Below are positions 1 to 42,072 of a DNA stretch of 64,000 nucleotides, piece by piece. Source of the DNA: Octopus sinensis (Eukaryota). The stretch covers positions 34,658,001-34,722,000 of the forward strand of contig NC_042997.1 in NCBI RefSeq assembly GCF_006345805.1. Direction: 5' to 3'. The translations under genes and the position numbers were made by a program. Each line of letters opens with the position of its first letter. Position 1 is the stretch's first letter. The notes under the pieces were generated by a model. It was not told the DNA's origin. It saw nothing but the letters and a program-made list of their open reading frames with translations, and searched no databases.

Positions 1-516
1 ATTACCTCCTCTATTACTGAACACATTCCCCAAAATTCACCTAATTGTAATTGCCGTCCTGGAACCATCTGCCCGTTACAAACCCATTGCAGAAGATATA
101 ATGTAATTTACAAAGGCACTGTCCTTAATCTATTACACAACTTTACAGCCATATACATAGAATCAACCAAACATTTTAGGCAAAGATATGCCACTCACCT
201 CCATTCCTTTAGATACGATAAACATAGTAAATCTACAACACTCACCAACCACATACATCAACTCAAAAATACAAATATTGCCTATACTCTATCGTGGTCC
301 ATACTAGACTCAGGGCTTCCCTACCGAGATCAACGCTCAACCTGCAAAATTTGCCTGAAGGAGGCACTTCACACGAAACACAACTCTCCAGCACTGCTAA
401 ATAAACATAATGAGGCACTAAGCACATGCAACCACCGCATTTTTCACACACTCAAATTCTACCACAAAACCAAATGCCTAAACGACCATACAATTCATTT
501 CCCCAATACCTATTAG
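1..516 (+). mobile_element. Penelope-like element, C-terminal GIY-YIG endonuclease coding region (5' part outside window)
   Basis: Frame +1 is open from 1 to TAG 514-516 with no ATG, so it is absent from the ORF track. It reads ...CNCRPGTICPLQTHC..NVIYK..AIYIESTKHFRQRYATHLHSF..STTLTNHI..WSIL..CKICLKEA..LLNKHNEALSTCNHR, the typical PLE endonuclease motif order. Confidence 0.85.
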
Positions 517-798
517 GTAATCCCAATAACATTATAAATCTACATTTTAACTCCTAATCCCTATCTAATTCCTCACTCATACTCGAATATCACAACCATC
601 TAATTTTATTCGTGTGTATGTGTATCCATGCGTGTGCGTGTATAGGTGTGTGTGTGTGTGTGTGTATGTCTGCAAGGTATATATACGTACGTGTACAGGG
701 GCAATAATACATGCAGATACACGTATATATGGGTGCGCATGTGCTCATATGCGTACCACTAAGAGTTGTGTATGTAGATATTGATTTGTATAAACATC

Positions 799-2620: not shown

Positions 2621-2934
2621 AGCAATGTACATTGATTTACATATTTAATCAAAAAGCGTTAGGCACATACGTATTCGTGTATTCGTCTGCAGGTCTTAGT
2701 CATTGTACTGCAGTTATGTTATACACACACATGCTCGTATATATATATATACTAGCATTAAAGACCCGTCGTTGCCGGGTCATAGTGCTAATGCATGTAT
2801 ATATATGTATATGTGTGTACATATTACATGTACATCTATATATATACATCTACACATAAAATGCAAAATACAAAGTTATATCTTGATATCGCTAGTGATA
2901 ACAATACTTAAAATATATAACAGACTGGAATTGC

Positions 2935-3241
2935 TAGCCCGTCTCTTGTAATTTCGATCAATTGCATCTTGTCCTCCCTCTTGTATAGAAGTGGGGCTAC
3001 AATCCAGCCTACCTCTACTTCTGGGGGGAAGGGGGGCATTTAATTTTTTTTTCCGGGACGTCCTACGTCCCAGATATAAAGATAAAAATAAAATATTTCC
3101 ACGTTGCAAGTTCGAGTCGAGTACTCCCTTGCACGCTCCGTTGACTCGAACCTTGCTTCTATTGTGGCGAATTTACCACCTCTGATTAGATACCTTTCAT
3201 AGTCGCACCAAAACACTTTTCGAAGGTGCTTTCCTCCATGT
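2935..3241 (-). pseudogene. Host Tx1-like element: 3' half of the interrupted ORF1
   Basis: Frameshifted translation MEESTFEKCFGATMKG/YLIRGGKFATIEARFESTERAREYSTRT/LQRGNILFLSLYLGRRTSR..LPP/EVEVGWIVAPLL aligns with IEEIEKCLGDIMKKATFVDRGKKYGTVEVRC..LKAENFTMWPTYKGRR..VPP of the ORF1 at 9212-10054. Confidence 0.8.
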
Positions 3242-3480
3242 GATTTTATTATTACCCACAAGGGGCGAACATAGATGGGACAATACAATCTGGGTCAGAC
3301 AAACGAATGGGTTTTTACAATAAATCGGATTTAAAAATTTTCATGAATTACAATAAATGGACAGAAATCGAATGATGGGACAGACCGGAAGACATTACGG
3401 GTGGAGTGGGTGCGGGTTTAGCTCGGACCCCACGAGCCCCGCCTCCCCACTGATACTTTTGGTTGCGCTTGGTATTACGT

Positions 3481-6400
3481 TTATGTTGTATCTTTCACTC
3501 GCAACTTTCGTGCTACATCCTTCCATCGTTCTTCATACACTCTCCTAGTCAGGCATATTCTCTCCAGCCCTATCTTCCTTTTCAGGTGAAAGATGAAATA
3601 ATTCATCAAACCAGGGCCGGAGATGAACTTGCCTGACTGTAAACCTTTCATTCTCGTCTTCCATATCACCTCTTTCGCAATTGCTACTACAACGAGAAAA
3701 CGAAACTTACCTTCATTCACGAGGAAATCCGGTGGGTCAATTTTTGTAATCGACTCAGTCGACAGCTGTACTCTTCGTGTACCTGACAACAGGTGTTCGG
3801 CATAAACCCACACCTCAGACACGTCCGGACAATGAACAATAGCGTGCAGGACGGTTTCCCTATCCCGCCCGCATCTTGGACATATCGGACTGTCTTGGCC
3901 ACCGTGCCTTGCGAGTTTATCCCGAACAGGTAGAGCTCCTCTGTAGCATTGCCATGCCAGAGACTTCTGGAAGTTGTCCAGTGTCCTCGGCTCGAACGTA
4001 CGTCGGAACAGACTGGCCAGCTGATTATCGTCGAGACCTAGGGTTTCCTCCAAGGTATCTTCACATTCCGCCTCTACCAACCCTCTATAGAGGAATGTGG
4101 TGGAACCCCCACCGCAGGCGTTGCCCGAGCGACGGAATAGCAGGAGAGCCTTGCGACACTCCGTGTACCAAGTACCAAGTTTCGATCTACGATTCAGCCA
4201 GGTTTCCCATCCACCGAAACTAGTGAACTTGGGAAACATCAGTTTTGCTAGCGAAGACCACACCCGTTCACCATCCAGGTAGAGCCACAGATGTCTTAAC
4301 CTCAGCGCATGTCTGCGCATCATCAGCCAAGGCATCCCTAGCCCACCCTTTAACGGTTGTTGACAGCAAGTAGAGCGTTTCACAAGTGGTTTCCCGCCCT
4401 TCCACAAGAAGTAGAAGAGCTGTCTTTCCAACTTGATCAACCACGAGTCAGGGCAAGGAACGACGGAAAGGCGGTAGGTGATAACCGATGCGATAAACAC
4501 ATTGGCCACCTCCGCCCTCCCTTTCAGGGATAGCCACCGCCAAGACCAGGTCTTGGCTACTGCAGCCACCTTGCTCGTTACCTCGCCCCAATTCTTCTCT
4601 ATTTGGAGGTCTGGACCGAACCAGACCCCTAGCAGTTTAATCGGACCCTCCGTCCAACGTCCCACGACGCTGTCAGGAGGCATCGACTTGCCTCTCCAGG
4701 TGCCGAGTTGCAAGCCGACTGACTTTTCGCGATTAACTTTTGCTCCTGTCACCGTCTCGTAAACCTCTATGGCCTTGCCTACTTTACATAGGTGGTCCAT
4801 TTCGGTTACGATGATGGTGATGTCATCCGCGTACGCTGACACTGATTTTCCATTACCTGGCTGTCTCGGGATGCCGCTCAGTTTTCGCAGTAATGGCTCA
4901 AGAGCCATCACGTACAAAAGCGGGGAGAGCGGACACCCTTGACGAACCGAGCGTTTGATTTTGAACGGCTTCGACAAGAAGCCGTTCACCCGAACTACCG
5001 AGTCGATGTTATCATAAATTTGGATAATCCACCTGAGGAAGCCAAGGCTCAGCCCGAACCGTGCCAGGGCAGATACCAGGTAACGATGGTCGACCCTATC
5101 AAAAGCTTTAGATTGGTCTAAATGGACCAGTGCCCCGCCCTTGCCAGAATCACTATTAAACCCCTCTATAGTGTACCGCATTAGATGGAGATTATCCTGA
5201 ATGGATCTGCCCGGAACGGCACATGTCTGTGCCTCTCCGATCAGACCATCCGCGACACGCGCCAATCTTTTCGATAACACTTTGGCCAAAATCTTCAACT
5301 CTGTGTTTAGCAGAGTGATGGGCCTGAAATTATCAATGCACTCCCCCTTGCTCGGGTCCTTTCTGACGAGAGTCACTACTCCCCGGCGCACAGATCTGGG
5401 TATAAGCCCGTTCTGCTGCCAGTTCGCATAGACCTCCGCCAGTAGGTGCCCGAACAAGTCTGGCATACTCTTATATAACTCATAGGGTAGACCATCCAAA
5501 CCCGGCGCCTTGCCCGCGCCGCAGTCCGCCATTGCCTCAAACACCTCCCCAGGCGTGATTGGCCCTTCACAGCCCTCCGCATCTCGCCCCGATAAGCGCG
5601 GCAGACCGTCGAGTAGGTCCGTAAAGGCCCTCCTCCTATCCAGTCCGCCGCACTCACCGAAAAGCTGAGCGAAGTGCTCCTGAAAGGCCTCACACATCTC
5701 CTCGGGTTCGTTTATCAACTCACCTTGTTGGTTCGTCAAAGATCGAATCGTGGCATCGTTACCATGCTGAGCTTCCACCACTCGGCCCATCTCACGGCGT
5801 TGATTCCTTCACATCCCATATGACGGATTCTAGCCCTGACAATGCAGCCCATGTGTTTGGCCTCGAGGTGCTGGTTTAACACCAGTCTCTTGGACGCCAC
5901 CTGAGCCGCAGAGCCAGTTTTCATGGCTTCCTCTAATTCCTTAACTAGAGTAGTTTCCCTTCTAGCCTCTCTAGCCACTACTCCTATGCTATATCTAATA
6001 GACTCAAACTTGATGGCTCGTTTGAGGGCGTACCACCATTTGTTATTAATGATGGTACCAGATAGTGCCCTCTGAATTATATTCCTAATCCGGTCTTTGT
6101 ACTCCTTAATCGCCAAAAGGGACGTATTAAGTTTCCAGTAACCGGATCCTCTATTTTTAACCTTATCTATGTCAAGCTTACAAGTGACCATTTTATGATC
6201 ACTGTAGCTGATCGGGTAAAACTGTGGGCACTTAGCTATTTTACTGTCTACTTTTCTAATTAGTATTCTATCTAAATATGACCTGGAAGATCCGTCGCTG
6301 TTTGACCATGTCCACAATGGAGCGTTCGGAAATTCCAGCCTATAAGGATCTGCTAGCTCAAAGCGGCTTAGCAGTTCCATGAAGCCACTGTTGCCTTTTC

Positions 6401-6877
6401 TATCTGGACACGAGCCAACATAATCTACATCCGCTTTGCAAATTGTGTTAAAGTCTCCTAGCACCACTAATGAATGCGAAGTACAAGAAAGCAGTTTTCT
6501 AGTTCACGAAAATAATCACTTTGCCCTGTATGGTTGGGTGCGTAAATTGCAACCAGTCTGATAACTTTACCATTACTGAACGTCAAATCCATGACGACCA
6601 GCCTACCTTCTGGATCTGCAAAAATTAACTTTTTCTCAGAAACCCGGTTTCTTTTTAATAGGACCAACACCCCACTCCCGCCTGTAGGACTGCCAGGAGA
6701 GAAAAAACTCTCGTAGCCGTCAAACAGCGGGAGTAGACCTCTTGGCCCCTCTAACCGGGTTTCTGTAGCAACAATAACATCTAAATTACGCGACCTGATG
6801 TCATGCAGGAAGCGACCTTGCTTCCAGCCTGCTCCCAGGCCGCGCACATTCAAACAACCAACATAAATGTAATCCAT
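3481..6877 (-). CDS. ORF2: APE endonuclease + reverse transcriptase + C-terminal CCHC zinc finger (~1130 aa after repairing two 1-bp frameshifts)
   Basis: EN motifs GCLNVRGL, ATETR, AIYAPN, LGDFN, YLDRI, YSDH. RT motifs NFRPITLLN, LDQSKAFDRVDH, RQGCPLSP, YADD. C-terminal CPRCGRDRETVLHAIVHC. Frameshifts near 6484 and 5784. Confidence 0.92.
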
Positions 6878-6885
6878 TGCTTACC

Positions 6886-8262
6886 TTATATCAGTGGTTC
6901 GGTTTTCTCTTGTTCTTCAAACTCTTTTTCTGGGCCTCGTGGGGGAGTCTGACGTAGGCCCTCGAATATATGTGGAGATGTTACATCCAACCTAAGTGGG
7001 CCTACGTCATGGAAGAATTCTGACTTTATCCGCCCGTAATCCCTCCGGTCTATTCTGTAAATTACAAAGTCATTTTTTTTTTCTACTTTCTCTACTTTGG
7101 CCATGGCTGCCAACACGTTTCCGAGTCTGCTATTTGATGCCTTTACGGCCATATATGCGTTCATTGACTCTTTTTTCTTTTTTAAAATTACTCTGGGAGG
7201 GGTGGTTTCCGTTTTTCTTTTTTTTTTTCCGATAATTTTTTCCCACCCTTCCTCATTTATCTTTTCCTCGCTCTTTTTTTTTTCCGCCGCTGGTTCTGCT
7301 GTCACCGTCACCTCCACACCTTCAGTCTTCCCTTCTGGGCCGTCTGACGCTGCTTCTGGTGACACATTGTCTTCTTTTTCTTTTGGCTTAGGTGCTTCCT
7401 GCGGTTTGGGTTGGGGTTGGCATTCCGCCCTTACATGCCCCTTCTTGCCGCAGCCGAAGCACCTCGGTTCCTGCCCTCCACGAACACTGTTATTTTCTCG
7501 TCTTCACTAATCTTTACCGTTTCTGGAATTTCTTCCAGTGTTTGCACCTCCGCCTGAATGGCTATCACTATTTTTGGCCTTTCCAAAAATCCTCTTCCTC
7601 CACTGTGGCCTGGAGGATGTTTATTTTTTCCTCCAGACCTACCATCACTGCTGCCACCAGACATTCATCATCAGCCTCTGGCGGTATGTTGTTCATTGAA
7701 ATTTTTGACGTCCTTTTTCCTTTATACAATGGTAGTAAGACAATGTTTTCCGCTTTGATCGGCTCCATCGATAGTTTCTTCGCTATATCCTCCGTAGTAA
7801 AACGCACCTCCACTGTGCCGTATCTTTTTCCTCTGTTTATATACGTTATTTTGTCCATAAACGGTTTTAGACAAGACTCTATTTTTTTTCTTCGATTTTT
7901 TGGATCATTTTTTTCGTTGTGTCGTAAGTTTTATATATTATTCTTTTTTTCTCTATATCGTCATGTATTTGTATGTTTGTGGCCACAGTCACTTCTGTGC
8001 CTTCTTTTTTTACGCAGTCTGCAAATTTTTTAAAATTGTCTATATTTATTTTTTTGATCTTTTTCCCAGCCACTTCAGCGAATTTTTTTGCTGGAGTTGA
8101 TGCTGGTACTGGTTTTTCCATTTTCTTGGGCGACGCCGCCTCTTTTTTCTTCGGCGACAACGCTTCTTTTTTTCTTGGCGACAACGCCTCTTTTTTACTT
8201 GGCGACAACGCCGGGTATTCATCCTCGCTCGTCACGGGCGAATAAGAGATGGGGGACTCCAT
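6886..8262 (-). CDS. ORF1 of unit 3 (~460 aa after repairing three 1-bp frameshifts): RRM-like region, CCHC knuckle, charged linker, C-terminal domain
   Basis: Joins ORF-track pieces 7879-8271, 7568-7858, 7431-7664 and 6886-7365. Knuckle CFGCGKKGHVRAEC at 7420-7461. Frameshifts at T8 7882-7889, T5 7571-7575 and TT 7468-7469. Confidence 0.88.
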
Positions 8263-8493
8263 CTTGAACAAATGGCTTTAACAAGCCTTTGGTAAATCCA
8301 AATTAATTGTAGTTTTCCCCCACTGAGGGGGGAACACCAACGCGAAGTCTTCGCGCGAAGGCTGACTTCGTCCGTTAGACAACAATAGACAAAAACAGGT
8401 AGACCAACAGTATATAATAACAGAGATAATAGTACGAGAGCAAAAAATATATATCAACTTACTAATAACGCAAAAAATTGCTTTCCTCCATGT

Positions 8494-10405
8494 TGTTTTA
8501 TTATTACCCACTAGGGGCTACATAGATGGGACAATACAATCGGGAAAATGAATAATGAGTTATGAAGTTTGTACAATGTGGTGCAATGCCCACTCGATCC
8601 CCGAAATCGAGCGGTTACATTTCGTCATTTATTTTTATTCGTCAACAATATTTTCAAATAAAACATTTTATACATTTTCAACATACATTTCAAAAAGTTT
8701 TACAAAGTTCAACATTTCTTTTTTTTTTTTTCCGAATTTAAAGTTCTTTTTATCATTTACAAATTAAAGTTTTCACAATACCTTTTCTTTTATATATACT
8801 CCATTATGTCTACCAAATCTGAGTAAATTTCCATCGTTCGAGGCCACCTTGGAAGTCGGCATTTCATATGTTTTAACACGTTCTTGCCAGCTGCCTCGAT
8901 GAACGCCTCGGCGTCGTTCTCGTGGACGAGTGCACCTGTTTCTTTCCATTCGGTGCCCATCCTGACCCACGTATATCCGTTTGTTTCGCTTATTAAATTT
9001 TCCATCTCCTCACAATGCTTGTGATGGATCAACGTTCCATAGTATTTGAATTTTCTATTCGTACCTGCGTTTTCTCTAGTTTTTCTCTTAGGACTTACTT
9101 CCTCTTTTTCTCCTCCCTCGGTTTCTCTCTTTCTCTCTTTTGCTTTCTCTTCTTTCTTTTTCCTTCTCTTGTCTTTTTGGCTCTTTGTCTGCCGTCTCTC
9201 TACCCTGTGCCTTAAGTTCCTTTCTGTTGTTTCTTTTCCTTTTTGCATACCATCTTTTCCTTTCTCTTGGTTCTGTTCCTTCTCTTGTTCTTTTCCTGCT
9301 TTTTCTCTTTCCTTAATGTACTTTCCTTTTCTTTCTCTTGCTTTTGCCTTGGCTCCTTCTCCTCTACTTCTGCACCCTGTGAATTTTGCTCCTTTTCTAC
9401 TATCTTCTTCCCTTTGTTTTCATTTTCCTTCAGTGCGCTGTTACTTCCCTTCTCTTGTTGTTTCTCCGTTATTTCCTTTTCCTTGTTTTCGCTGTTCTTT
9501 CCTTCGTGTTCGTTTTCCTTCTCTCCACTTGGTGTCTCTTTTTGCTCCGCTGTGAATTCATACAGCGGACATTCCTTTTTTATGTGCCCTCTTGAACCGC
9601 ACAGGTAGCAATTCGGTTTTCTGCCTTCCACTATTACACTAATTGTTTTTTCGTTTTCTATTTCTATTTGGAAGGGAAATCTTTCGATGTCTTCAATTGT
9701 GGCCATCAGCCACAACTCGACTCCGAATCCCTTCCAATTTACAACGTTCGTCTCCTTAATTGACCCTATTTCTACTTCCTCTTTTGCTGCTCCAATAATG
9801 GCTGTTACTAGCATTTCTGTTTTAATATTTGGGGGCACCTTTGGGACTCTTACCCGTACCCCTCGTCTTCCTTTATACGTCGGCCACATGGTGAAATTTT
9901 CCGCTTTCAGGACAGTGGAAGCCAATGAGGCCGCCACTTCCTTTGTTGCGCATCTCACCTCCACCGTACCATATTTCTTTCCTCTGTCCACAAAAGTCGC
10001 TTTTTTCATGATGTCCCCCAGACATTTCTCTATTTCTTCAATCGTCACTCTCACCAGTTTTCTCGTGTTTCTATCTTGCGTTCTATACGTTATCGTCTTG
10101 TTATTTTTTCTTCTATTGTTTCCACAGGCGGGACCAGCTTCACGCTGTCACCCTCCCTTTTGACGAACTTCTCGTATTCCTTCAATTGTTCTTTTCTAAA
10201 GAACACTTCTTTTATTCTAAGTGACTCGTCACTTTGTTGTGTGGCGACCCCCGCGTAAGTCTCCATGACTTGAGGGTCGACACACCTTCTATAAAAGGTT
10301 CAAACACGTAGCGGCAAACGCCTCGCGCGATTCAATTTTTGACAATTTTTAACAGTTTTTTTTCAATTTTCACATACAAAATAACTCACAACACATGTGG
10401 ATAGA
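8494..10405 (-). mobile_element. ORF1-only Tx1-like element (unit 2, HAL1-like) with intact LINE 3' tail and 12-bp TSD
   Basis: No EN/RT sequence. The 3' ~50 nt are nearly identical to the unit 3 tail. TTTCCTCCATGT at 8482-8493 and 10406-10417. Confidence 0.85.
8773..10266 (-). CDS. ORF1 of unit 2 (~500 aa after repairing about three 1-bp frameshifts)
   Basis: METYAGVATQQ... (ATG at 10266) joins 9212-10054 (knuckle CYLCGSRGHIKKEC at 9569-9610), 8790-9248 and 8773-8970. Confidence 0.85.
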
Positions 10406-10417
10406 TTTCCTCCATGT

Positions 10418-12077
10418 TATTTCTTTATTACCCACCAGGGGCTACGAAGAATGGCGGAACATAACAAAACATGGGAGACATAGAACAATATGATTAAATT
10501 TATGAGCAAATGAAAATGAAAAATGATAATATGAAAGCGATGCTAACGGCCCCCTCCGCCAGCATCACTTACCTGTCCTTTTGTTTTCACTGTCACCTGA
10601 ATGTTCATTCCCAATACGAAGACCATCCATATCCATTCTTACTCCGAAACTGTCCTCCATATATTCCACGAATTCATCGCTCATTCTTGTATCTTTCACC
10701 TCCCAATTCTCCCTTTCACACCTCAACACAAACTCATCTATATTATTTCTTTCCAGCACTGCATATCTGGTCCCATCCATTTCATACCATTCATACTCCT
10801 CCATTACCCTTTCAACCTCTTTCTGTTCAGTCACAATATAAATGTTCGGCCTGGGTTCGTTTTCAAACTCTTGTCTGTCTGTATTGTTATTTTTCTTTGT
10901 TTTTCTTGTTGGAGGGGAGCGGGTGGGTTCACGTCTGCAGGGGAAGGGTAGGATTCAGAGGGTGGGTGGTGTTGGGGTGGGTTGGGGCTTCGCACAGTTT
11001 TTCTTTTTCTTTCTTTTTTTCTCTTTTTTTTTCCTTCTTCCCACTCTTGTTGCATCTCCTCTTCTTCTGTCGTTTCTTTTTCCTTTGGTTCTCTTTGGTT
11101 TCTTCCTCTTTTGGGGCTTCCGCGACGATTTCCTTTTCTTTTTCCTTAGTGGTGGAGGGCAGTAGGCTCTTATGTGACCCCTCAGGCCACACTTGTAGCA
11201 CCTGGGCGCCTACCCTCCACCCACACTCTCATAATAATATTCCAGTTTTTATACTGTCCGTAAGCTTTTCTATAACTTCCGCCTCCGTCTGTATGTTCAT
11301 TACTAGTGTGGCACCTCTCACGCCTTCATATTCATAATGGCGTGGAGGATGTCCACTTTATCTTCATTTCCTTTGATAACCGCAGCCGTTATTAATTCGC
11401 CCTCTAGGTGTGGAGGTATTCCTTCACCCTAATTCTGGTGGTCCTTCTATTCAAATACGAGGGGAACAAGTAAACTTTTTGTACTCACCACCTTGGCTGC
11501 TATATTCCTGGCTGCTTTCTCACTTTTAAATTGTACCGTTATGGTTCCATATTCTAATCCTTTTGTCATGTACACAATTTCTTCTCCGTCCGTTTGAAAG
11601 CCTCTTCAATTCCTTCCATGTTAATCACTTCCATTTTTCTACCTCCATTCATAAATACTTTATATTTAATGGTTCTACGATGGAACCAGTCTCCGCGCCC
11701 TGCTAGAGGCAACAGCTCAACCTCTCCGTTCTCCTCCTCCTTCATGAACTCCTGGAAGTCCGTCAACTTAGCCAGGTCTATCTCTTTTTCTGTTGACTTC
11801 TTCGTTATACCTGCATAGGTGCTTTCCATTTTTTTCACCGCCAACTCCTCATCAGATGTCGACGAATTTTCAGAGAAATTTCTCCCTTCCATCTCATCCG
11901 TTTGGTAGAGGCGGCTCATAGTCGCCTCAGACCGAAAAACGGCCCCTCCCGAACAGAAAACGTGCGACGCACAGAACCAGTGCGACGCGAAACCGCACCA
12001 ACCGACGTTCCAATTCCGCAACCACAATTCACTTTTTGTTGTTTTTCTTTTTTAACGAATTTTACAGAGCGCAAAAA
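10418..12077 (-). mobile_element. ORF1-only Tx1-like element (unit 1, HAL1-like) with LINE 3' tail
   Basis: ORF1 is followed by a ~145-nt 3' UTR ending GTAGCCCCTGGTGGGTAATAAAGAAA. No ORF2 sequence. Confidence 0.8.
10565..11919 (-). CDS. ORF1 of unit 1 (~450 aa, many 1-bp frameshifts as assembled)
   Basis: MSRLYQTDE..TIKYKVF../YMTKGLEYGTITVQFKSEKAA../PSYLNRRTTRIRVK/IPPHLEGELITAAVI../knuckle CYKCGLRGHIRAYC at 11159-11200/..EYEWYEMDGTRYAVLE.. Confidence 0.78.
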
Positions 12078-12190
12078 AACGCGACCTTTTTTCTCTACAT
12101 TGTATACTTTATAGACAATAGTCTTTTCTTTAATTTAATTTTTTATTATCCATCTGGACTATTCCATTTCTGCACGCTAATTTTATTTCA
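12078..12190 (-). pseudogene. Host Tx1-like element: 5' half of the interrupted ORF1
   Basis: 12134-12078 translates to IKEKTIVYKVYNVEKKGRV, matching IEKKRIIYKTYDTTKK (unit 3) and RRTIKYKVF (unit 1). It joins MEESTFEKC at 3239 with the conserved Tyr-to-Cys spacing of 21 residues. Confidence 0.7.
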
Positions 12191-12387
12191 ATTTATTCCC
12201 ATTCATGTGAAACCACTTACTCAAGTTCAAGTCATTGATGCAATTTTATACCAATTGCTATTTTTACTTTTGTTATGTTACTACATATAATTCAATTGTT
12301 ATTATTATTTTTATTGTTAAAGTGAAAGTATTTGACATAAAATAGAGAAATGTTTTTGTTTCACTTTTAAAACGTAATACTGAAATA

Positions 12388-12724
12388 GTGGAGAAGATAT
12401 GATATTGCTATGGGCTCGCTCTATGCAAGAAGTTGAACATTTCTTTTTGCCCATGAGACTACATGAAACCTAAGTAAGGCATGTGTAAAATTTGAATGGA
12501 ATTGGTTGTGTAGTTCTCAAGTTTTAGGGAATCGTAGTGGAGAAGATATGATATTGCTGTGGGCTAGCCCTTGGCAAAAAGTTCAAAACTCTTTTTGCCG
12601 ATGGCACTCCCCGGACCCGAAGTAAGGCATGTATAAAATTTAAATGAAATTGGTTGTGTAGTTCTCAAGTTTTAGGGAAACACACAGACAGACAGACACT
12701 TTCTCAGTTTTATATGTATAAAGA
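12388..12724 (-). mobile_element. Non-autonomous Helitron-like element, 5' part, with a ~149-bp internal tandem duplication
   Basis: Minus strand begins A|TCTTTATACATATAAAACTG..GTCTGTCTGTCTGTGTGT. The repeat unit 'gtggagaagatatgatattgc' occurs at 12388 and 12537. No 3' CTAG end seen. Confidence 0.55.
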
Positions 12725-12740
12725 TATTATGTATGTATAC

Positions 12741-12787
<47 letters not shown>

Positions 12788-12925
12788 ATATATTATATAT
12801 ATATATAATATATATATTATATATATAACGGGAAGCTTTATGAAAATAGACAAAAGACGAAGGCAGGTGGAAAACAAACAAACAATTGTATTAGTATGGC
12901 GCTCAGGAAGTATAAATAAAACAAG

Positions 12926-15579: not shown

Positions 15580-17103
15580 TATAACCTCCACATCGTGCAA
15601 ATGATGTATCGGTCACCGCGGTGCTGGAGAGGATAGAGTTTCAATGCTATAAGGCAGTCTCAATGATCATGATCAGTCATGCCCTTTATTCTTTTAGTCA
15701 ATGAACTCTGAGGTGATTCAATTTTAGATATGTTTTGTTTTGTATGGGGAGACCATAGGGGGCAGCGGTATTCGAGATGTAGCTGTTCAAAGGACGAGAA
15801 AAGAGGAATCATGGTATCTTGTTCTCTGGGCCGGAAGGTGCATAGGATATCCAGGAGCTCATCCTTCGACCTATATCGACTTTATTGTTTGAGTGAGCAC
15901 TCCAGCTGACTTTGTTATCAACAATCACTCTAAGTTCTCTGATATTATTAGATGCCCTGAAGAAAGAGAGTATGGCTGTTTCAGCATAGTCTTTTTTCCA
16001 AATTTTCCCTCGTTTTAGTTGCATTTTCTTTTTGTCAACCCATTGACTCTCAGCATGTAGATCAGAATGGAGTTCAGTTCGGTCTTCTTCTCCATTGATA
16101 ATTTTCTGGAGCTTGGAGTCATCAACGAATATTTTTACTTTACTGTATTTTATGACGCTAGAAAGGTCAAATATGTAGACTATAAAGAGTAGCTAGCCCA
16201 AGACAGTAGCCTGATGGACACCACTGGTGACTTTTGCTGGGCTTGAGTGGATTCCACCGATCACAATACTCAATCCAGTGTAGTAGTTTCCCACGGATTC
16301 CAACATTTGACAATTTTGACTGTAGGATATTATGGTCAACTCTGTCGAACGCTCTACTGAAGTCAAGATATATGACATCAGATTTCGAATCTGATCCCAA
16401 GGCTAAAAGGATATCATCAATAAGAGCTGAGTTGGACAGTCCCTGCCGCAGCGAAAGCTATGCTGGTTTGACATTAGGAGATTGAGGCTTTCCAGGAAGC
16501 CAGCTATCCTTGATCACACCACCCTTTCAAACACTTTAATAATATGGGAGGTGAGTGAGATTGGGTGATAGTTGACTGCGAGGGATCTGTTTCCCTGTTT
16601 GAAAAACGGGATAACAAACTGGGATAAGAGCTGTTTCGGTGTATAACCTGAGTCTAAAAAATTTCTCTAGAAGTTGGTCAGAGGACTGCAAGTTGGTACC
16701 TACATTCCTTCAGGAGACTAACGGGGAATCTATCAGGGCCCACAACAGAATAGTATTTGATCTTATTTATTGCTGCTATGATGTGTGAAGCAATAATGGT
16801 GATGTCCGAGATTATATGCTGGGAAACGATTTCGTTCACTTCACTTGCGTCAATATCAGTGGGATCACTAAAGACAGAGCAGTATTGTTTCTGCAGTACT
16901 CTTTACTCTTTTACTTGTTTCAATCATTTGACTGCGGCCATGCTGGAGCACCACGACCCCGGGACTTATTCTTTGTAAGCCCAGTACTTATTCTATCGGT
17001 CTCTTTTGCCGAACCGCTAAGTGACGGGGACGTAAACACACCAGCATCGGTTGTCAAGCAATGCTAGGGGGACAAACACAGACACACAAACACATACACA
17101 CAA

Positions 17104-29647: not shown

Positions 29648-30195
29648 TAGAGGCACAAGGCGTGAACTTTATGGGAGGAGGGCTAGTCGATTTCATTGAC
29701 TCCAGTGTTCAAGTGGTACTTACTTAATCGACCCCGAAAGGATGAAAGACAAAGTCTACCCCAGCGGAATTTGAACTCAGAACGTAGCGACAGGCGAAAT
29801 ACCGCTAAGCATTTCGTCCAGTGCGCTAACGATTCTTATTTCTTTACTGCCCACAAGGACACAAACAAGGACAGATAAACGGATTAAGTCGATTATATCG
29901 ACCCCAGTGTGTAACTGGTACCGCTAAGCATTTCTGCCAGCTCGCCGCCTTCGACAGGCGAAATGCCTATTTCTTTACTACCCACAAGGGGCTAAACACA
30001 GAGAGGACAAACAAGGACAGACAAACGGATTAAGTTGATAATATCGACCCCAGCGCGTAACTGGTACTTATTTAATTGACCCCAAAAGGATGAAAAGTAA
30101 AGTCGACCTCGGCGGAATTTGAACTCAGAACGTAACGGCTGACGAAATACAGCTAAGCATTTCGTCCAGTGCGCTAACGTTTCTGCCAATTCGCC
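29648..30195 (-). mobile_element. Cluster of three family C SINEs (29648-29833; internally deleted 29836-29948; complete 29968-30195)
   Basis: Repeated 'gaatttgaactcagaacgta', 'gctaagcatttc' and 'aaacggattaagt' blocks. The latter two copies have a tail resembling the Tx1 3' end. Confidence 0.8.
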
Positions 30196-30752
30196 GACTT
30201 TGATAATGCACGTATTTTCTTTGCTGAGCCAATGAAAAATATCATACTTAAAGCGTCTCTTCTAATTTGCTGTACATTCCTTCAAATATTTCACCGAGAA
30301 TATTCATTTTTAATGCCGCGAATGTATTAATGACACAGCGGACATTTTTATCGAAAAATGGAATTTAAGAGGTATCCACCTACTTTTGAGCAAGTATTTA
30401 GTTGCTTACTTCTCCGAAAGTACATCATTCTAGGTGAGATGTGATATATTTCTCATGAATCATGGAGAATTTACTCTTCTTACTAATGTTATCGACATTA
30501 ATTTCCTTGCAAGAAATGCACTCATGCATAAACTTCTGTTGATTTGATGATATTCTCCTCCAGGATTCTTTATAAGTAGGTTGTCTTCTAATCTCACTAT
30601 GTTGTTTATAATGCTGTATACACATGATACACACGTAGTCTATGTATATTTGCATGTATATATTAATGCCTATATGTCTGTAGCTATTCCTCCATCCATC
30701 CATCCACTCCTTTCACTCCCTGTCTGTCTCTGTCTCTCTCTTTCTGTGTCTG

Positions 30753-35967: not shown

Positions 35968-36662
35968 GTATATGTATATATATATATGTACACGAATAGT
36001 ATACTTATATTTGTATGTATGCATTTATAACCAAAATAACAGATGTGACAGTTGTCATTATTACAAATATGAAAAAAATTGTCTGTACTACTATTCAAAC
36101 CTCAAACTACTTACAGGCTGAGTATAAAATGAGATGAATGATACAACTTTGTTATATCATATTACAAACATTTCATATCAATTCCGCCATATATTCTCTT
36201 AAATATAAAAAACAGAACACACTCAAAATTTATTAAAAAAAAATTATACATTTGAACCACGTGAAACACATTTAGACAGGAAATCATATGTTATTTCTTT
36301 ACCTGTATTTATTGAAAATTCTTGCAATCGTTTTTTTTGTTTATCATATGTTAGTTTGTACAAAGTATTAATATGGTTCTTTGTTATACCTTTACCATGT
36401 GCAGTGAGAGCATAACAAATATGTTTGCTATCAAAAGTCAGATAGATGCTATATTTGCGTTAAATCATTTGCTAAACGTCTTCGCACGTCTCTTAAAAAT
36501 AAAATACTCATTGCTCGGAATCAACCAAAAATTTCATGTATAAAGTAAATGATAAAATCGCGTATATGTATATGTATATATACATATATATATATATACA
36601 TATATACATGCATATATATGCATATATATATATATATACATATATACATGCATATATATGCA

Positions 36663-36736
<74 letters not shown>

Positions 36737-37491
36737 CATATATTCATATATATGTGTATATATATGAACATGTTTGAACATATATATAAATATAAATATG
36801 TGATTAAAAAATTGACACAAATATTATGTGTAACTTACACATATATGTCTTAATATATTTAATTATATGTTATACGTATGCATATATATTAATATATACA
36901 CAAATATATATACATATATACATGCATATATATGCATATATAAACAAATTTATTCTCATTCTGTATATACATGCATATTACACACGTTTAAATGTAAGAT
37001 AGCATATGTATGTGTCTGTGTATGCAGGGATGTGATTGCGTAATATACGTAAACATTATGCGTATATTTATATACTTAAGCTTCTCACTAATATACATAC
37101 CCATTCATTCACACATAGACACATTATAAATAACATTATAAATAACACTATAACTATTATATGAATTATTTCAAACAATATATGGACATAAAGAAGACCA
37201 CAGATCCATATATAGTCATATGCTTGCTGACGTTCATATAGACATCCATACATATGTTTTAATAATATACATACACTTGTGTAAGGGAATATACATATGT
37301 ACATTTTCAATATGTATATATAGGTATGTATATATGCATATACACACACACAAACACATATATATAAATGTATATATATACACACTCATGCTTACGTGTA
37401 TAATATACACGTACTCCTAATACATATACACATATATGTATACTTTTATATATATGTATATATATATGCATATATATATATATATATACAC

Positions 37492-37595
<104 letters not shown>

Positions 37596-38032
37596 GTAGT
37601 TTTATGAGCTCGGTTCACTCAAATACACACATTTCCAAGCATAAATAACGGTGCAAATATGTTTATTTGTGTATACATTTGCTTCTGAGTTTCAATGTTT
37701 TGGTCTGAATATATCTAAATTATGTGAATTATAATAGTGAACTTCTTTATGTATATATTCATATGTGTATCCATGCCTCCACTCGTATATAAATCGATAT
37801 ACATAACCTGTTTATAATTGTGCAAATATTCCATATCAGCTTATATGTATATATGTATATCTACATACATTCATACAGATACACACCTACAAAGACACAC
37901 ACTCACACATACACGCTTATATATATATACTCACACGTGCACACACACATATATATGTATATATATGTATATATTTTAATGTAAATCTATTTGCATACAC
38001 GCCCACTCCTGTGTACGGCATAAATATATATA

Positions 38033-38118
<86 letters not shown>

Positions 38119-38474
38119 TTATGTGTATGTATATATATACACATACATAAATAAATATTAAATCGTATATATATATATATATACGTATATATATATATAT
38201 ATATCTATATATATATATACACATATTTATACATTTATATATGTACATTTATCTATATAATAAACATGTTATTATATAACATGTTTATTAATATGTAAAT
38301 GAAAGTATATTTAGCGATATATATATATATTTGTATATATATATATATATACATATGTATACGTGTCTATATATATATATATATATATGAATGTGCAACT
38401 TAACTTATCAGTTATCAATTATACAGATGATATATTTCTAATTGTATTACGTTTCTTGTGCATATGTACTTATG

Positions 38475-38507
<33 letters not shown>

Positions 38508-38540
38508 GTATATTATGTGTATTTAGACATATATATATGC

Positions 38541-38582
<42 letters not shown>

Positions 38583-39060
38583 GCATATAGATAGTTACAT
38601 ATTTTCTTTCAAAAATGTTTACGCATATTTACTTTTATTTAAAAGCTTCTTGTAGACCTGGTTTAGCAAAACAATCCAATCGAGCATAAAATCTCAACGT
38701 AAGTCAATTGTAATGAGATATCTTTTGAAGCAGTCTGATGCAGTCTGTGTCTTAATTGTTTTATAATCCATTATATATGAACCAGGATAGAAAAAAAAGG
38801 ATCACAATGAAAAAAAAATAACACAAGTATTCGTTATAGTAAACAGAAACAGGGAAGCATTAAAAATCGGTATTTTTTTGTTTTACAAAAAAAAAAAAAA
38901 TTAATAACTTATGTATCAAATTTAAATCCCGTTAGTTATCAACATGAATAAAATTTCATCCAACGTAAACGAAAACGAAGTCCTTGTTTCAATTGTTATC
39001 TTGTTTATATTTATTTTCAGTTCTGTGTTATGCAACTGTTCTGGTTTTCATATCTGAAGT

Positions 39061-39061
<1 letters not shown>

Positions 39062-39132
<71 letters not shown>

Positions 39133-39157
39133 GTAGTAGTAGTAATAATAATAATAA
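39062..39157. repeat. (TAA)n microsatellite
   Basis: Direct reading; others at about 41285-41348, 42005-42200, 44493-44580 and 47583-47720. Confidence 0.95.
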
Positions 39158-40043
39158 TTCTTATTATTATCAATGTGAAAGGGCTTATATATATATATAT
39201 TGTTTCGAAATTATAATTTCCATGTAATAATATTTACTGTTAAGATCCATGAGAACTAAGCAAAATGTCTTCATATTCTTCATTCAGTTTTATGAGAAAT
39301 AAAAAAGGTACAATACAGATTTCATCACCCCTCTTACAACACATGTTCATCTTGAAAAGTTTTCATCATTCGAATTTCCCATCATAATTGTAAATAATTT
39401 TTAATGGGTAGATTTCTTTATTTCTTTTTTTACATTCTTTGGCGTGTAAAAAATCACATCTATATGTCACAAAGATGGCGTCTCTTCATTTTACAATGGC
39501 GTTTACATTTTACTCACAACATGTAAATTACAATTTAAGTTTTTGCCATACGCGTTTGTCGCACCCGCTTTTTCTTTGGTTTGTAATTCTTTCCAATATT
39601 AATGGCATTGATATTAATATTGCGAGGCCATGATCATATTCGAATCGGACAGAATCCATGGTCTATTTTATGTAACATTTTATGATTTTATAATGCTGTC
39701 AAAAATCATCATAATAATTCATTTAAAATAATTCTGTAAAGTTTCTCGTAAAAGGAAGGTTCATTTAGAACTCTAAATAGAGATAAAACACAAAGAAGCT
39801 TTTAGAAAACAAAAAGCGATCGAAGTAACCCACAACATAATTCCATTGCTTATCATCATCATGTAATGTTAATTTTAAAACAAACATATAATTAAAAATG
39901 TAACATAAATATAGTACAGGGACACTCACACACGCCCACGCGTACACATGCATATAAATACATATATATATATACGTTTACTTATATATATGTGTGTGTT
40001 TGTGATATTAATATATATATATATATATATATAATATATAAAT

Positions 40044-40108
<65 letters not shown>

Positions 40109-40115
40109 TATATAA

Positions 40116-40164
<49 letters not shown>

Positions 40165-40490
40165 ATAATATATATATATATATTAAATATATTATATATA
40201 AATATATATATATATTATATATATATATATACATACACACACACATACACACACACAGACACACACCCATATATATATATTCATACACAAATATTATTTC
40301 AGAAATTGCTTATAATATAATAAAATATGGTGGTGCGTGCTACTACATATAAAACCTAATTGTCCATACATGTCGATAGATATGTAGGTTCGTATGATTT
40401 ACGTAGGAGTATATTCATGACTTTATGCTTTTATGGGATAATATATTGGCGTGCGGTTATACGAATTTGTATATGAATGCTAATATTGTT

Positions 40491-40552
<62 letters not shown>

Positions 40553-41287
40553 CATACATATGTGTGTGTGTGTGTATGTGTGTGTGTGTGCGCGTGTGCG
40601 TGTATTCCTGTGTGAAAATATTATACATTTTTCCAAGACACAATAAGTGTTTTTCATAGTTGTAATAGAACTATAGAAGTAGATCTATTTTGTGGATGAT
40701 GCAAATATCAAAGAAGGGAACAGTTCCCCCTTCTGTAGCATCATGTAGCGATAGTACATCGCCTTGTTAATTTTCTATGATTGTCACTATTTCAGCTAAG
40801 TAAACTTAATCAGTAATCCCGAAATAACGAAATCTACAGCAACTATATTAAGCGTAACAATATTATTATCAACAGTAATATTATTATCTATTGTATTCTC
40901 ATTACTATAATTAGTGGTCAAAATGTTAATTGTTACATTAGTTATTTGGATAAGAGTTCTTCTGTATTTAGTTCTTAATTCAAATATTGCCTCAGTTCGC
41001 TGTAACTTAATTTGGTGAAACCTATTTCAATGATTTTCGCAGTATGAAAAGAAAAGTTATTGTTTCTTTAGATATTGAACTCTGAACGTAAGAGTTACAG
41101 AGAAAAAATGTTATGTGGAGTATTAAATTACTATTCCTCTCTGATGTGCAGCACCTCTGCATCCTTGGTTTGAGGGGACAAAATGAAAGAAAAGAATTAT
41201 ATGAAAAGGAAACAATTAGAAGCGGGATAATTTAATTACCATAATCATTAACAATATTATTTATGTATTGGACTACATTTATAATGT

Positions 41288-41350
<63 letters not shown>

Positions 41351-42072
41351 GTAACGATAATAACAAGCAACAACAATGACTTCAAAAATAACGCGGCGGC
41401 TAAAAACAACGTTATAGTAACAATGAAATCAATTTGTATAAGATGATGATGATAATACTAACACTAATAATATAATAATAATAATAATAATAGTAATAAT
41501 AATAATAGTTATAATAATAATAATAATAATTATACTTATAATAATAATAATAATAATAATAATAGTAATAATGATGATATTAATAATCTCCTCAATAATG
41601 GATAAGCAAAAATGCTATTTCCGTGGTTAGTAATCTATATGGCGGATATTTTTAAATTTCGGCTTCGAACATTTAAGTTTTTCCTCATCCCACTGACTCT
41701 CTACAGTTATTCCTATGACCAAGTTATAATGATAGTGTTGATGATGAAGATTAAGACGATGATCAACACGAAATCTATCAATATCGTTTTTGTCATCGTG
41801 ATAACAAAATCCACCATCATCATCATCATCATACATGAACTGCTGATTGATCATCATATCACCATTACATATATCACTGATATATCGACATCTTCAACAC
41901 TTCCGTACTAGTTATCGTATAGATCATATCAATCAATCTATATCGTTGTCTTTATCTTTCTAATGATGATGATCATGATGTTCATGATTCAGTAATTAAT
42001 AAGAAATATTATTATTATTATTATTATAATTATAATTATATTTATTATTATTATAATTATTACTACTACTAC

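What the first reader, a model, noticed from the sequence alone, without database searches (positions are those of the whole stretch)
2935..12190. A LINE family that appears to target the ORF1 gene of a related LINE: three successive insertions at one site
Seen in the sequence, minus strand: host ORF1 5' half ending ..YKVYNVEKKGRV (12078); unit 1; ACATGGAGGAAA; unit 2; ACATGGAGGAAAGCA; unit 3; ACATGGAGGAAAGCA, which is itself the host ORF1 3' half (x-M-E-E-S-T-F-E-K-C..). Removing 3242-12077 and restoring one base rejoins the host frame, with exactly the Tyr-to-Cys spacing of 21 residues found in the ORF1s of units 2 and 3. Established: Tx1-clade APE endonucleases are often sequence-specific (microsatellites, U2 snRNA, tRNA, a DNA transposon in Xenopus). 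Inference: the target here is coding sequence in another LINE's ORF1, making this a hyperparasitic retroelement system that disables a competitor. I do not know of a described Tx1 family with this target.
Basis: partly seen in the sequence, partly recalled or inferred. Interest (0 to 1): 0.92.

Follow-up and report, generated by a model that had tools for sequence, protein, structure and literature searches.

The report
Site-specific LINEs stacked in relic repeat
An octopus jumping-gene family, made of one autonomous LINE and several ORF1-only hitch-hikers, always inserts at the same nucleotide of a dead 1-kb repeat derived from a related LINE's ORF1 and builds head-to-tail stacks there; this is a new example of the known "safe landing pad" strategy, not an attack on a living competitor.

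Summary
The arrangement is real. On the minus strand, three head-to-tail LINE-type units, each followed by ACATGGAGGAAA(GCA), split an ORF1-like sequence. Six Octopus vulgaris loci on five chromosomes, found through unit-2-like ORF1 proteins, show the same architecture in unrelated flanks. Each has a host 5' arm, 1 to 8 or more ORF1-only units, exactly one ORF1+ORF2 unit in last position, and the host 3' arm.

Site-specific insertion is therefore well supported. All 27 tails are followed by a copy of the local target. Units cluster by subfamily across chromosomes, not by locus.

Three parts of the interpretation need correcting:
- Units 1 and 2 are ORF1-only non-autonomous partners. They share only the 3' tail of about 40-70 nt with unit 3.
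- The host is a roughly 1-kb non-coding relic. Its consensus already carries stops and frameshifts, so no competitor is being disabled.
- The 15-mer is a target-site duplication, not the recognised sequence. Host variants that lack it carry arrays at the same distance from the 5' arm, with a different duplicated spacer.

Tx1-clade membership was not tested; only the L1/Tx1 type is shown. Tx1 families that target other transposons and stack tandemly around a duplication are already published. This is a new member of a known kind.

The parts
12086..12531 (-). Host 5' arm (H5'). AT-rich and non-coding except for about 20 ORF1-like codons next to the insertion site (..IKEKTIVYKVYNVEKK). A partial tandem duplicate lies at 12535-12679, and a microsatellite marks the left edge at about 12711-12827.
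   Evidence: 90-96% pairwise identity among the window and five O. vulgaris loci (L016, L018-L021) in otherwise unrelated flanks.
12080..12085 (-). Filler GTCGCG at the 5' junction of unit 1. It replaces about 11 nt of host (AAGATTTGAAC) and the left copy of the duplicated target.
   Evidence: Alignment of the window with five O. vulgaris host copies.
10418..12079 (-). Unit 1: an ORF1-only non-autonomous element. It has a 5'UTR starting TTTTTTTGCG, an ORF1 at 11919 to about 10565 with at least 4 frameshifts and at least 4 stops, a CCHC knuckle and a C-terminal domain, and a tail ending ..GTGGGTAATAAAGAAATA.
   Evidence: Three-frame translation, tblastn, tail alignment.
10406..10417 (-). Spacer 1: ACATGGAGGAAA, a 12-nt target-site duplication.
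8494..10405 (-). Unit 2: an ORF1-only non-autonomous element. Its ORF1 runs 10266-8790 with 2 frameshifts and a zf-CCHC hit (E=1.3e-5). The tail ends ..GTGGGTAATAATAAAACA.
   Evidence: 91-94% identical to units in L016 and L019, where the ORF1 of L019 unit 3 is intact at 493 aa.
8479..8493 (-). Spacer 2: ACATGGAGGAAAGCA, the left copy of the 15-nt duplication flanking unit 3.
3242..8478 (-). Unit 3: the autonomous-type LINE. ORF1 runs 8262-6886 (frameshifted, CCHC). ORF2 runs 6877-3481 and carries an APE endonuclease, a reverse transcriptase and zf-RVT. Two window-specific frameshifts lie near 6468-6493 and 5787. The 3'UTR is 3480-3242, with the tail ending ..GTGGGTAATAATAAAATC.
   Evidence: Pfam hits. 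The best solved-structure match is human L1 ORF2p at 1e-47. The ORF2 part is 98.5-100% identical to the L017, L018 and L021 copies. The L021 copy has an intact 1129-aa ORF2 with the endonuclease above Pfam's cut-off.
3227..3241 (-). Right copy of the duplicated target, ACATGGAGGAAAGCA, and the first bases of the host 3' arm.
   Evidence: Identical in the window, L017, L018 and L021.
2932..3241 (-). Its stops and frameshifts are shared by all copies.
   Evidence: Consensus of four loci. 32% identity and E=5e-17 to unit 3 ORF1; 28% and 2e-8 to unit 2 ORF1. Absent from the deletion-variant hosts L016 and L019.
2738..2931 (-). Host 3' end (H3end). It starts ATTCCAGTCTG, which is the alternative duplicated spacer in L016 and L019. 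It ends in a hairpin at 2749-2797 (ACTAGCA..GACCCG GCAACGA CGGGTC..TGCTAGT) followed by (TA)n. Homology between loci stops here.

Best explanation
The elements. A target-specific L1/Tx1-type LINE (unit 3) has an ORF1 with a CCHC knuckle and an ORF2 with an APE endonuclease, a reverse transcriptase and a C-terminal zinc domain. Several ORF1-only non-autonomous families (units 1 and 2, 'U2p' and others) share only its 3' tail of about 40-70 nt.

The target. All of them integrate by target-primed reverse transcription at one fixed nucleotide of a dispersed, dead repeat of about 1 kb. That repeat is the relic of a related LINE's ORF1-bearing element.

The array. Each integration duplicates the 10-15 nt that follow the nick. 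Repeated integration therefore builds a head-to-tail array in which every unit is followed by a copy of the local target.

Inferred steps:
- The site is chosen by the host's 5' arm, that is, by sequence upstream of the nick (..GTAGAGAAAAAAGAAGA N6-7^), not by the duplicated 15-mer.
- New units enter at the 5'-arm side of the array, so the ORF2-bearing unit next to the 3' arm is the founder.
- In the window, the last insertion (unit 1) resolved its 5' junction with a small target deletion plus filler. This removed the left spacer and part of the recognition arm.

Biologically this is safe-haven targeting of a neutral multicopy sequence. It is not interference with a live competitor.
For: Shown:
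- Architecture. The same architecture occurs in the window and in six O. vulgaris loci on five chromosomes. The flanks share only short dispersed repeats.
- Tails. 27 of 27 tails are followed by a copy of the local spacer. The spacers are locus-specific. L016, L018, L019, L020 and L021 keep a spacer copy between the 5' arm and the first unit.
- The 15-mer is not part of the element. Relatives in Argonauta (L001) and a JGI contig (L003) end at ..AATAAAGAAATC and continue with unrelated sequence or (ATT)n.
- Independent events. U2p units cluster by subfamily across chromosomes. L017 u1-4 are 99.0-99.2% identical to L018 u1-2, L018 u3-4 are 97.2-97.3% identical to L021 u1, and L020 u2-3 are 95.9-96.0% identical to the U2p unit of L019. 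Unit 3 copies are 98-99% identical where their host flanks are 89-96% identical. Inside arrays the junction nucleotides differ while unit bodies are 98-99.9% identical.
- Upstream determinant. Deletion-variant hosts (L016, L019) lack the 15-mer and the 309-bp ORF1 relic. They still carry arrays 6-7 nt after AGAAGA, with ATTCCAGTCT as the duplicated spacer. The same ATTCCAGTCTG sequence is present but unoccupied in all four full-length hosts.
- Direction of growth. L021 reads H5'|ACATGGCTCCAAGCT|U2p|ACATGGCTCCAAGCT|U3|ACATGGAGGAAAGCA. That fits only unit 3 inserting first and U2p then inserting at the 5'-arm side. In L018 and L020 the youngest U2p subfamily lies nearest the 5' arm.
- Dead host. 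The host consensus has shared stops and frameshifts.
- Precedent. Tx1 families are known to target other transposons, and tandem insertions 'sandwiching a TSD' are published (PMC4494074).
Against: - No empty host copy was seen, and none could be searched for.
- All loci were found through unit-2-like ORF1 proteins, so the sample is small (7 loci) and restricted to annotated ORFs.
- Unit 3 is single and last in 7 of 7 arrays. The model does not predict this (chance about 1 in 8640 if its position were random).
- The ORF2 of unit 3 is 98.5-100% identical among loci. That is as young as or younger than some units that should have inserted after it.
- In the window the leftmost unit, which the model makes the newest, is the most degraded.
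- Spacer copies within arrays vary much more than unit bodies, for unknown reasons.
- In L020 the 5' arm has a 3-nt gap next to the site, yet the nick position relative to TTTGAAC is unchanged. So 'distance from AGAAGA' is not exact.
- No biochemical evidence exists for endonuclease or DNA-binding specificity.
Confidence: 0.75

Rival explanations
1. The endonuclease recognises the coding 15-mer ACATGGAGGAAAGC in the ORF1 of a related, competing LINE, and insertion disables that competitor (hyperparasitism).
For: The site lies in ORF1-derived sequence. The four full-length hosts all have ACATGGAGGAAAGCA at the 3' junction. Unit 1's own ORF1 has a near-copy at the homologous codons (AACATGGAAGGAA, 11610-11622).
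Against: The host consensus is already non-coding, and the host is a relic of about 1 kb without ORF2. Arrays occur at the same place in hosts that lack the 15-mer (L016, L019) or carry diverged versions of it (L020, L021). After the first insertion, the intact 15-mer next to the 3' arm is never used again: 0 of 7 arrays have a unit to the right of unit 3.
Confidence: 0.08
2. One ancestral composite (host plus unit 3, with or without others) was copied around the genome as a block by segmental duplication or read-through retrotransposition. The arrays then grew by unequal crossing-over, so there was only one real insertion into the host.
For: Unit 3 is always single and last. The T2-type hosts carry their own unit 3 subtype. 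All copies share the same 3' end, and L018 has a truncated 5' arm.
Against: Unit 3 copies are 98-99% identical (ORF2 part up to 100%) where their host arms are 89-96% identical. ORF1-only units group by subfamily across chromosomes rather than by locus. The junctions between near-identical neighbouring units differ. The flanks are unrelated.
Confidence: 0.07
3. Self-tail targeting. After a first chance insertion, new copies are directed to the 3' tail of a resident unit and duplicate whatever follows it, whichever host sequence that is.
For: Every spacer except the one abutting the 5' arm is preceded by a tail. The Argonauta relative has a second 3'UTR copy just after its tail.
Against: It does not explain why the first insertion hit the same nucleotide of the host in at least two host types and seven loci. 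It does not explain why the spacer next to unit 3's tail is never reused (0 of 7 arrays). The L021 spacer pattern requires insertion at the 5'-arm|spacer junction, where no tail is present.
Confidence: 0.07

Closest known systems
Tx1L inserted in Tx1D (Xenopus laevis), and crocodilian Tx1-Mar / Tx1-9_AMi / Tx1-8_Crp families with SINEU-3 (Kojima 2015, PMC4494074)
   Same: An APE-type L1-group LINE inserts at a fixed position of another, multicopy transposon (piggyBac, Mariner, Harbinger or LTR elements). Non-autonomous partners share the 3' tail and the same target. Tandem insertions sandwich a TSD of about 16 bp through sequential insertion.
   Different: Here the target is a relic of a non-LTR element, an ORF1 pseudogene. 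The partners are ORF1-encoding half-LINEs rather than SINEs. Arrays reach 8 or more units, with one ORF2-bearing unit always last. Clade membership of the octopus element was not tested.
R1/R2 in 28S rDNA; Keno/Utopia in the U2 snRNA gene; Kibi/Koshi/Dong in microsatellites
   Same: Strict target specificity for a repeated, largely neutral sequence, and precise junctions. Relatives of the octopus element end in microsatellites (L003 in (ATT)n).
   Different: Those targets are host genes or simple repeats, not another retrotransposon. R2 uses a different, restriction-like endonuclease.
HeT-A / TART / TAHRE at Drosophila telomeres, and HAL1 (half-L1) in mammals
   Same: ORF1(gag)-only elements depend on an ORF2 supplied by a related autonomous element. 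HeT-A and TART also form head-to-tail arrays.
   Different: The octopus arrays are internal, sit inside a defined repeat and are separated by target-site duplications. They are not added to chromosome ends. The only sequence shared with the autonomous element is the 3' tail.
Stringent-type LINE/SINE partnerships (shared 3' tail, e.g. eel UnaL2/UnaSINE1)
   Same: A short conserved 3' tail with a small predicted stem-loop is the only sequence shared between the autonomous and dependent elements. An abundant octopus SINE carries the same tail.
   Different: Stem-loop support is weak here: 4 pairs, one of them compensatory. Recognition of the tail by the reverse transcriptase is inferred, not tested.

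Membership tests
L1 group of non-LTR retrotransposons (L1 + Tx1 clades) | ORF2 with an N-terminal APE-type endonuclease, a central reverse transcriptase and a C-terminal Cys-rich (zf-RVT-type) domain | tested here: met
   Window copy: RVT_1 1e-31, zf-RVT 3e-8, and two half-hits to Exo_endo_phos. Intact L021 copy: Exo_endo_phos 44.6 bits (cut-off 24.5), RVT_1 109 bits, zf-RVT 35.6 bits. The best solved-structure match is human L1 ORF2p at 1e-47, against 7e-26 for R2.
Tx1 clade | Reverse-transcriptase phylogeny places the element inside the Tx1 clade rather than L1 proper | not testable with these tools
   No Tx1 or Repbase reference sequences are available, and the supplement of PMC4494074 is not held. 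O. vulgaris is reported to have 13 recently active 'L1-Tx1' families (PMC13282606), but no link to this element was made.
Tx1 clade | ORF1 of the RRM + CCHC zinc-knuckle type (a Type I variant, described as consistent with Tx1 in PMC5203782) | tested here: inconclusive
zf-CCHC was found in unit 2 and in the intact L019 ORF1s. No Pfam RRM hit was found.
Tx1 clade | No poly(A) tail; a specific 3' tail; target-specific insertion with a TSD | tested here: met
   Tails end ..GTGGGTAATAA(T/A)(A/G)AA(A/C/T)NN with no A-run. The TSD is 10-15 nt. The site is the same in 7 loci.
Target-specific LINE (general) | Independent insertion events at the same nucleotide of the target | tested here: met
   Subfamily clustering across chromosomes. 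Unit 3 copies are younger than their host arms. Spacers are locus-specific. Flanks are unrelated.
Target-specific LINE (general) | Existence of unoccupied target copies (empty sites) | not tested
   No genome-wide DNA search of octopus assemblies is available. Three attempts failed: a host-peptide search, and pattern scans of prokaryotic genomes and viral contigs.
ORF1-only non-autonomous LINE derivatives (HAL1 / HeT-A type) | Contains a 5'UTR, a full ORF1 and a 3'UTR but no ORF2, and is amplified as such | tested here: met
   Units of 1.66-1.92 kb with no ORF2 hit. Intact ORF1s of 473 and 493 aa in L019. At least 4 families or subfamilies and at least 25 copies in 7 loci.

The most novel reading that the evidence does not exclude
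The site may be read out by a DNA-binding function that recognises only the upstream arm and cuts at a fixed distance whatever lies downstream. The natural deletion-variant hosts suggest this. The arrays would then be ordered archives of successive retrotransposition waves, founded by the autonomous element. Alternatively, live LINE relatives carrying the same ORF1 stretch are, or were, also hit, which would make the original hyperparasite idea partly true.
Probability: 0.15. Interest if true: 0.65.

Novelty: new member of a known kind. Interest (0 to 1): 0.45.

Why it matters
This adds a mollusc example to the target-specific L1/Tx1-type LINEs, with a target class not listed so far: a relic of another non-LTR element. 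It also has ORF1-encoding half-elements as co-targeted partners.

The deletion-variant hosts form a natural experiment. They separate the recognition sequence from the duplicated sequence, which is rarely available for APE-type LINEs and matters for efforts to understand or re-engineer LINE targeting.

The age-ordered arrays, and an intact ORF2 copy in O. vulgaris (L021), make the system testable in the laboratory.

It does not reveal a new kind of mobile-element warfare.

Tried and rejected
- Metagenome scan for the tail (GCCCCTNGTGGGTAATAA). It gave 11 hits, all chance matches in bacterial-looking contigs.
- Protein search with the host frame-1 peptide, to catch called ORFs of empty host copies. 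No hits.
- Exact-pattern scans for the host junction in prokaryotic genomes and viral contigs. No hits.
- ORF2-based retrieval of same-family copies. The best hits are only 58-61% identical (Argonauta, an unnamed assembly, JGI contigs). They were useful only for defining where the element tail ends.
- Supplement of Kojima 2015, sought for Tx1 reference sequences. Not held.
- The idea that the 15-mer is the element's own 3' end. Rejected because relatives end before it and because the spacers are locus-specific.
- The idea that spacers are carried on the RNA by 3' read-through. Rejected because the same unit family has ACATGG.. in the window and ATTCCAGTCT in L016 and L019.
- The idea that arrays grow at the 3'-arm side. 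Rejected by the L021 spacer pattern.
- A tail hairpin. Only 4 predicted pairs with one compensatory change, which is too weak to claim.
- An unfiltered BLAST of the 5' flank was swamped by microsatellites. It was repeated with the low-complexity filter on.

Full report
**What is in the window.**

Read on the minus strand, 12531 down to 2738 holds the following parts in order.

| Part | Window coordinates | Notes |
|---|---|---|
| Host 5' arm | 12531-12086 | AT-rich |
| Filler | 12085-12080 | GTCGCG |
| Unit 1 | 12079-10418 | |
| Spacer | 10417-10406 | ACATGGAGGAAA |
| Unit 2 | 10405-8494 | |
| Spacer | 8493-8479 | ACATGGAGGAAAGCA |
| Unit 3 | 8478-3242 | |
| Spacer, start of host 3' arm | 3241-3227 | ACATGGAGGAAAGCA |
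| Rest of host 3' arm | 3226-2738 | |

- The 12-mer occurs three times in 64 kb, against 0.38 expected.
- BLAST of the region against itself finds only the last 40-68 bp of the three units to be alike (alignment).
- Unit 3 has an ORF1 and an ORF2 with endonuclease, reverse-transcriptase and zf-RVT hits. Its nearest solved relative is human L1 ORF2p at 1e-47.
- Units 1 and 2 have a 5'UTR, an ORF1 with a CCHC knuckle and a C-terminal domain, and a 3'UTR. They have no ORF2. They are half-LINEs, not LINEs.

**Whose genome, and where the element ends.**

- ORF2 searches gave cephalopod hits at no more than 61% identity.
- The Argonauta hians copy (L001) and a JGI contig (L003) have the same tail motif. 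They end at ..AATAAAGAAATC and continue with unrelated sequence or (ATT)n. The ACATGG.. 15-mer is therefore not part of the element.
- A search with the unit 2 ORF1 core returned six Octopus vulgaris proteins at 75-96% identity. Their loci in assembly GCA_951406725.2 were fetched with 10-kb flanks.

**Seven loci, one architecture.**

All six O. vulgaris loci (L016-L021, on five chromosomes) repeat the window's plan:
- the same 5' arm, which was not reached in L017 because the array runs off the locus;
- one to at least eight ORF1-only units;
- exactly one unit 3, always last;
- then the same 3' arm, ending in the hairpin plus (TA)n. In L019 and L020 the unit 3 copy is cut short and the 3' arm was not found within the fetched locus.

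Beyond these arms the loci share only short dispersed repeats. The arms are 89-98% identical between loci. The 'host' is thus a discrete dispersed repeat of about 1 kb.

Its consensus, built from four to six copies, already contains stops and frameshifts. It lacks a zinc knuckle and an ORF2. Its frameshift-corrected peptide still aligns to unit 3 ORF1 (32% identity, E=5e-17) and to unit 2 ORF1 (E=2e-8). The host, however, was dead when it spread.

**The repeated 12-15-mer is a target-site duplication.**

I tabulated all 27 tails of these families in the seven loci. Every one is followed by a copy of the local spacer.

| Loci | Spacer |
|---|---|
| Window, L017, L018, L021 | ACATGGAGGAAA-type |
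| L020 | ACGTGTCTGAAATC |
| L021, twice | ACATGGCTCCAAGCT |
| L016, L019 | ATTCCAGTCT |

- L016, L018, L019, L020 and L021 also keep a spacer copy between the 5' arm and the first unit.
- The same unit family (unit 2) is flanked by ACATGG.. in the window and by ATTCCAGTCT in L016 and L019. The spacer is therefore local and is not carried by the element.
- In the window the left-most copy is missing. The other hosts read ..AAAAAAGAAGATTTGAAC|spacer, but the window reads ..AAAAAAG+GTCGCG+unit 1.

**Independent insertions, not a copied block.**

- ORF1-only 'U2p' units cluster by subfamily across chromosomes, not by locus. L017 u1-4 are 99.0-99.2% identical to L018 u1-2. L018 u3-4 are 97.2-97.3% identical to L021 u1. 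L020 u2-3 are 95.9-96.0% identical to a unit in L019.
- Unit 3 copies of the window, L018 and L021 are 98-99% identical, and their ORF2 parts reach 100%. Their host arms are 89-96% identical.
- Neighbouring units that are 99.5-99.9% identical have different junction nucleotides. That fits separate reverse-transcription events rather than unequal crossing-over.
- One O. vulgaris copy (L021) has an intact 1129-aa ORF2 with the endonuclease above Pfam's threshold. The family may therefore still be active.

**What is recognised (inference).**

- L016 and L019 carry a host variant in which the 15-mer and the whole 309-bp ORF1 relic are deleted: ..AGAAGA|GCTAAC ATTCCAGTCTG...
- Their arrays sit 6-7 nt after AGAAGA. 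That is the same distance as in full-length hosts (AGAAGA TTTGAAC^ACATGG). They duplicate ATTCCAGTCT instead.
- The same ATTCCAGTCTG sequence exists 309 bp downstream in all four full-length hosts and is never occupied there.
- The intact 15-mer next to the 3' arm is never reused once unit 3 is in place (0 of 7 arrays).
- The simplest reading is that the 5' arm specifies the site and the nick falls a fixed short distance downstream. The 15-mer is merely what gets duplicated.

**Direction of growth (inference).**

- In L021 the two spacers flanking the U2p unit are the same mutated 15-mer, while the one right of unit 3 is canonical. That requires unit 3 to have inserted first and U2p second, at the 5'-arm side.
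- The L020 spacer series, and the position of the youngest subfamily in L018 and L020, agree with this.

**Points that do not fit well.**

- Unit 3 is single and last in 7 of 7 arrays (about 1 in 8640 by chance).
- Its ORF2 is nearly identical among loci, while its ORF1 region is mosaic. In L017 that region is only 76-87% identical.
- The window's left-most unit 1 is the most degraded.
- Spacer copies vary far more than unit bodies.
- Recombination between tandem unit 3 copies that resets the arrays is one possible explanation. It is untested.

**Comparison with known systems.**

- Tx1-clade LINEs are known to target other transposons: Tx1L in the piggyBac element Tx1D, and crocodilian families in Mariner-N4_AMi, Harbinger and LTR elements. 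Tandem insertions of their SINE partner 'sandwiching a TSD' through sequential insertion have been described (PMC4494074).
- ORF1 with CCHC domains is described as consistent with Tx1 (PMC5203782).
- O. vulgaris is reported to hold 13 recently active L1-Tx1 families, with no mention of this arrangement (PMC13282606).
- I could not place the reverse transcriptase phylogenetically. 'L1/Tx1-type' is shown; 'Tx1 clade' is not.
- The features that appear new, as far as my four full-text searches and the three papers read went, are the target class (a non-LTR relic), the ORF1-encoding partners, and the natural separation of the recognition arm from the duplicated sequence.

**Verdict.**

Site-specific insertion is well supported. 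The hyperparasite reading and the 15-mer-as-target reading are not supported. This is a new member of a known kind, of moderate interest.

Noticed in passing
window 29969-30198 (-); also L018 about 5545-5591 (+) and L021 about 494-760 (-): An abundant octopus SINE ends in TGTCCTCTCTGTGTTTAGCCCCTTGTGGGTAGTAAAGAAAT, the same tail module as the LINE units. Its copies are followed by unrelated sequences. The tail therefore looks like a reverse-transcriptase recognition module that is also shared with a SINE that is not site-specific.
   Followed up: partly
L021 12664-16050 (+) (O. vulgaris OX597816.1, about 52.2 Mb): This unit 3 copy has an intact 1129-aa ORF2 (endonuclease 44.6 bits, reverse transcriptase, zf-RVT). 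It is a candidate active master copy.
   Followed up: partly
alignment of unit 3 copies, window 8120-7330 equivalent (unit positions 355-1150): Unit 3 is mosaic. ORF2 is 98.5-100% identical among the window, L017, L018 and L021. The ORF1 region of L017 is only 76-87% identical, and the L016 5' part only 66-80%. This suggests exchange of ORF1 modules between lineages.
   Followed up: no
window 2749-2797 (-), and the same place in L016, L017, L018 and L021; an inverted partial copy at L020 8433-8563: The host repeat ends in a nested hairpin (ACTAGCA..GACCCG GCAACGA CGGGTC..TGCTAGT) followed by (TA)n, and TA-rich microsatellite also lies upstream of the host in L016. The host itself may have been a (TA)n-targeting element.
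   Followed up: partly
L003 1990-2105; L001 12000-12660: Relatives with about 58-59% ORF2 identity have different targets. The JGI contig copy abuts (ATT)n directly. The Argonauta copy is followed, after about 115 bp, by a second 5'-truncated 3'UTR with its own tail.
   Followed up: no
spacers in L017 (405-12855), L018 and L020: Spacer copies within one array differ at 1-5 of 13-15 nt, often creating CG (ACATCGAGG, ACAGCGAGG, ACATGCGG, AAATGGCGG). The flanking unit bodies are 98-99.9% identical. The first 5-10 nt of unit heads are equally variable.
   Followed up: no
window 12386-12531 and 12535-12679 (-): The host 5' arm carries a tandem duplication of about 146 bp at about 85% identity. It is also present in L020 and L021 but not in L016 or L019.
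   Followed up: no
window 11610-11622 (-): Unit 1's own ORF1 has AACATGGAAGGAA at the codons homologous to the host's AACATGGAGGAAA. It is not interrupted.
   Followed up: no
P0054: A protein labelled 'MAG: Herbaspirillum sp.' is 52% identical to this cephalopod-type LINE ORF2. This is probably animal DNA binned into a bacterial MAG.
   Followed up: no
window 16272-16394 (-); window 36000-42000: A short unrelated reverse-transcriptase fragment (44% identity to ORF2 residues 215-255). A stretch of about 6 kb has only 23% G+C.
   Followed up: no
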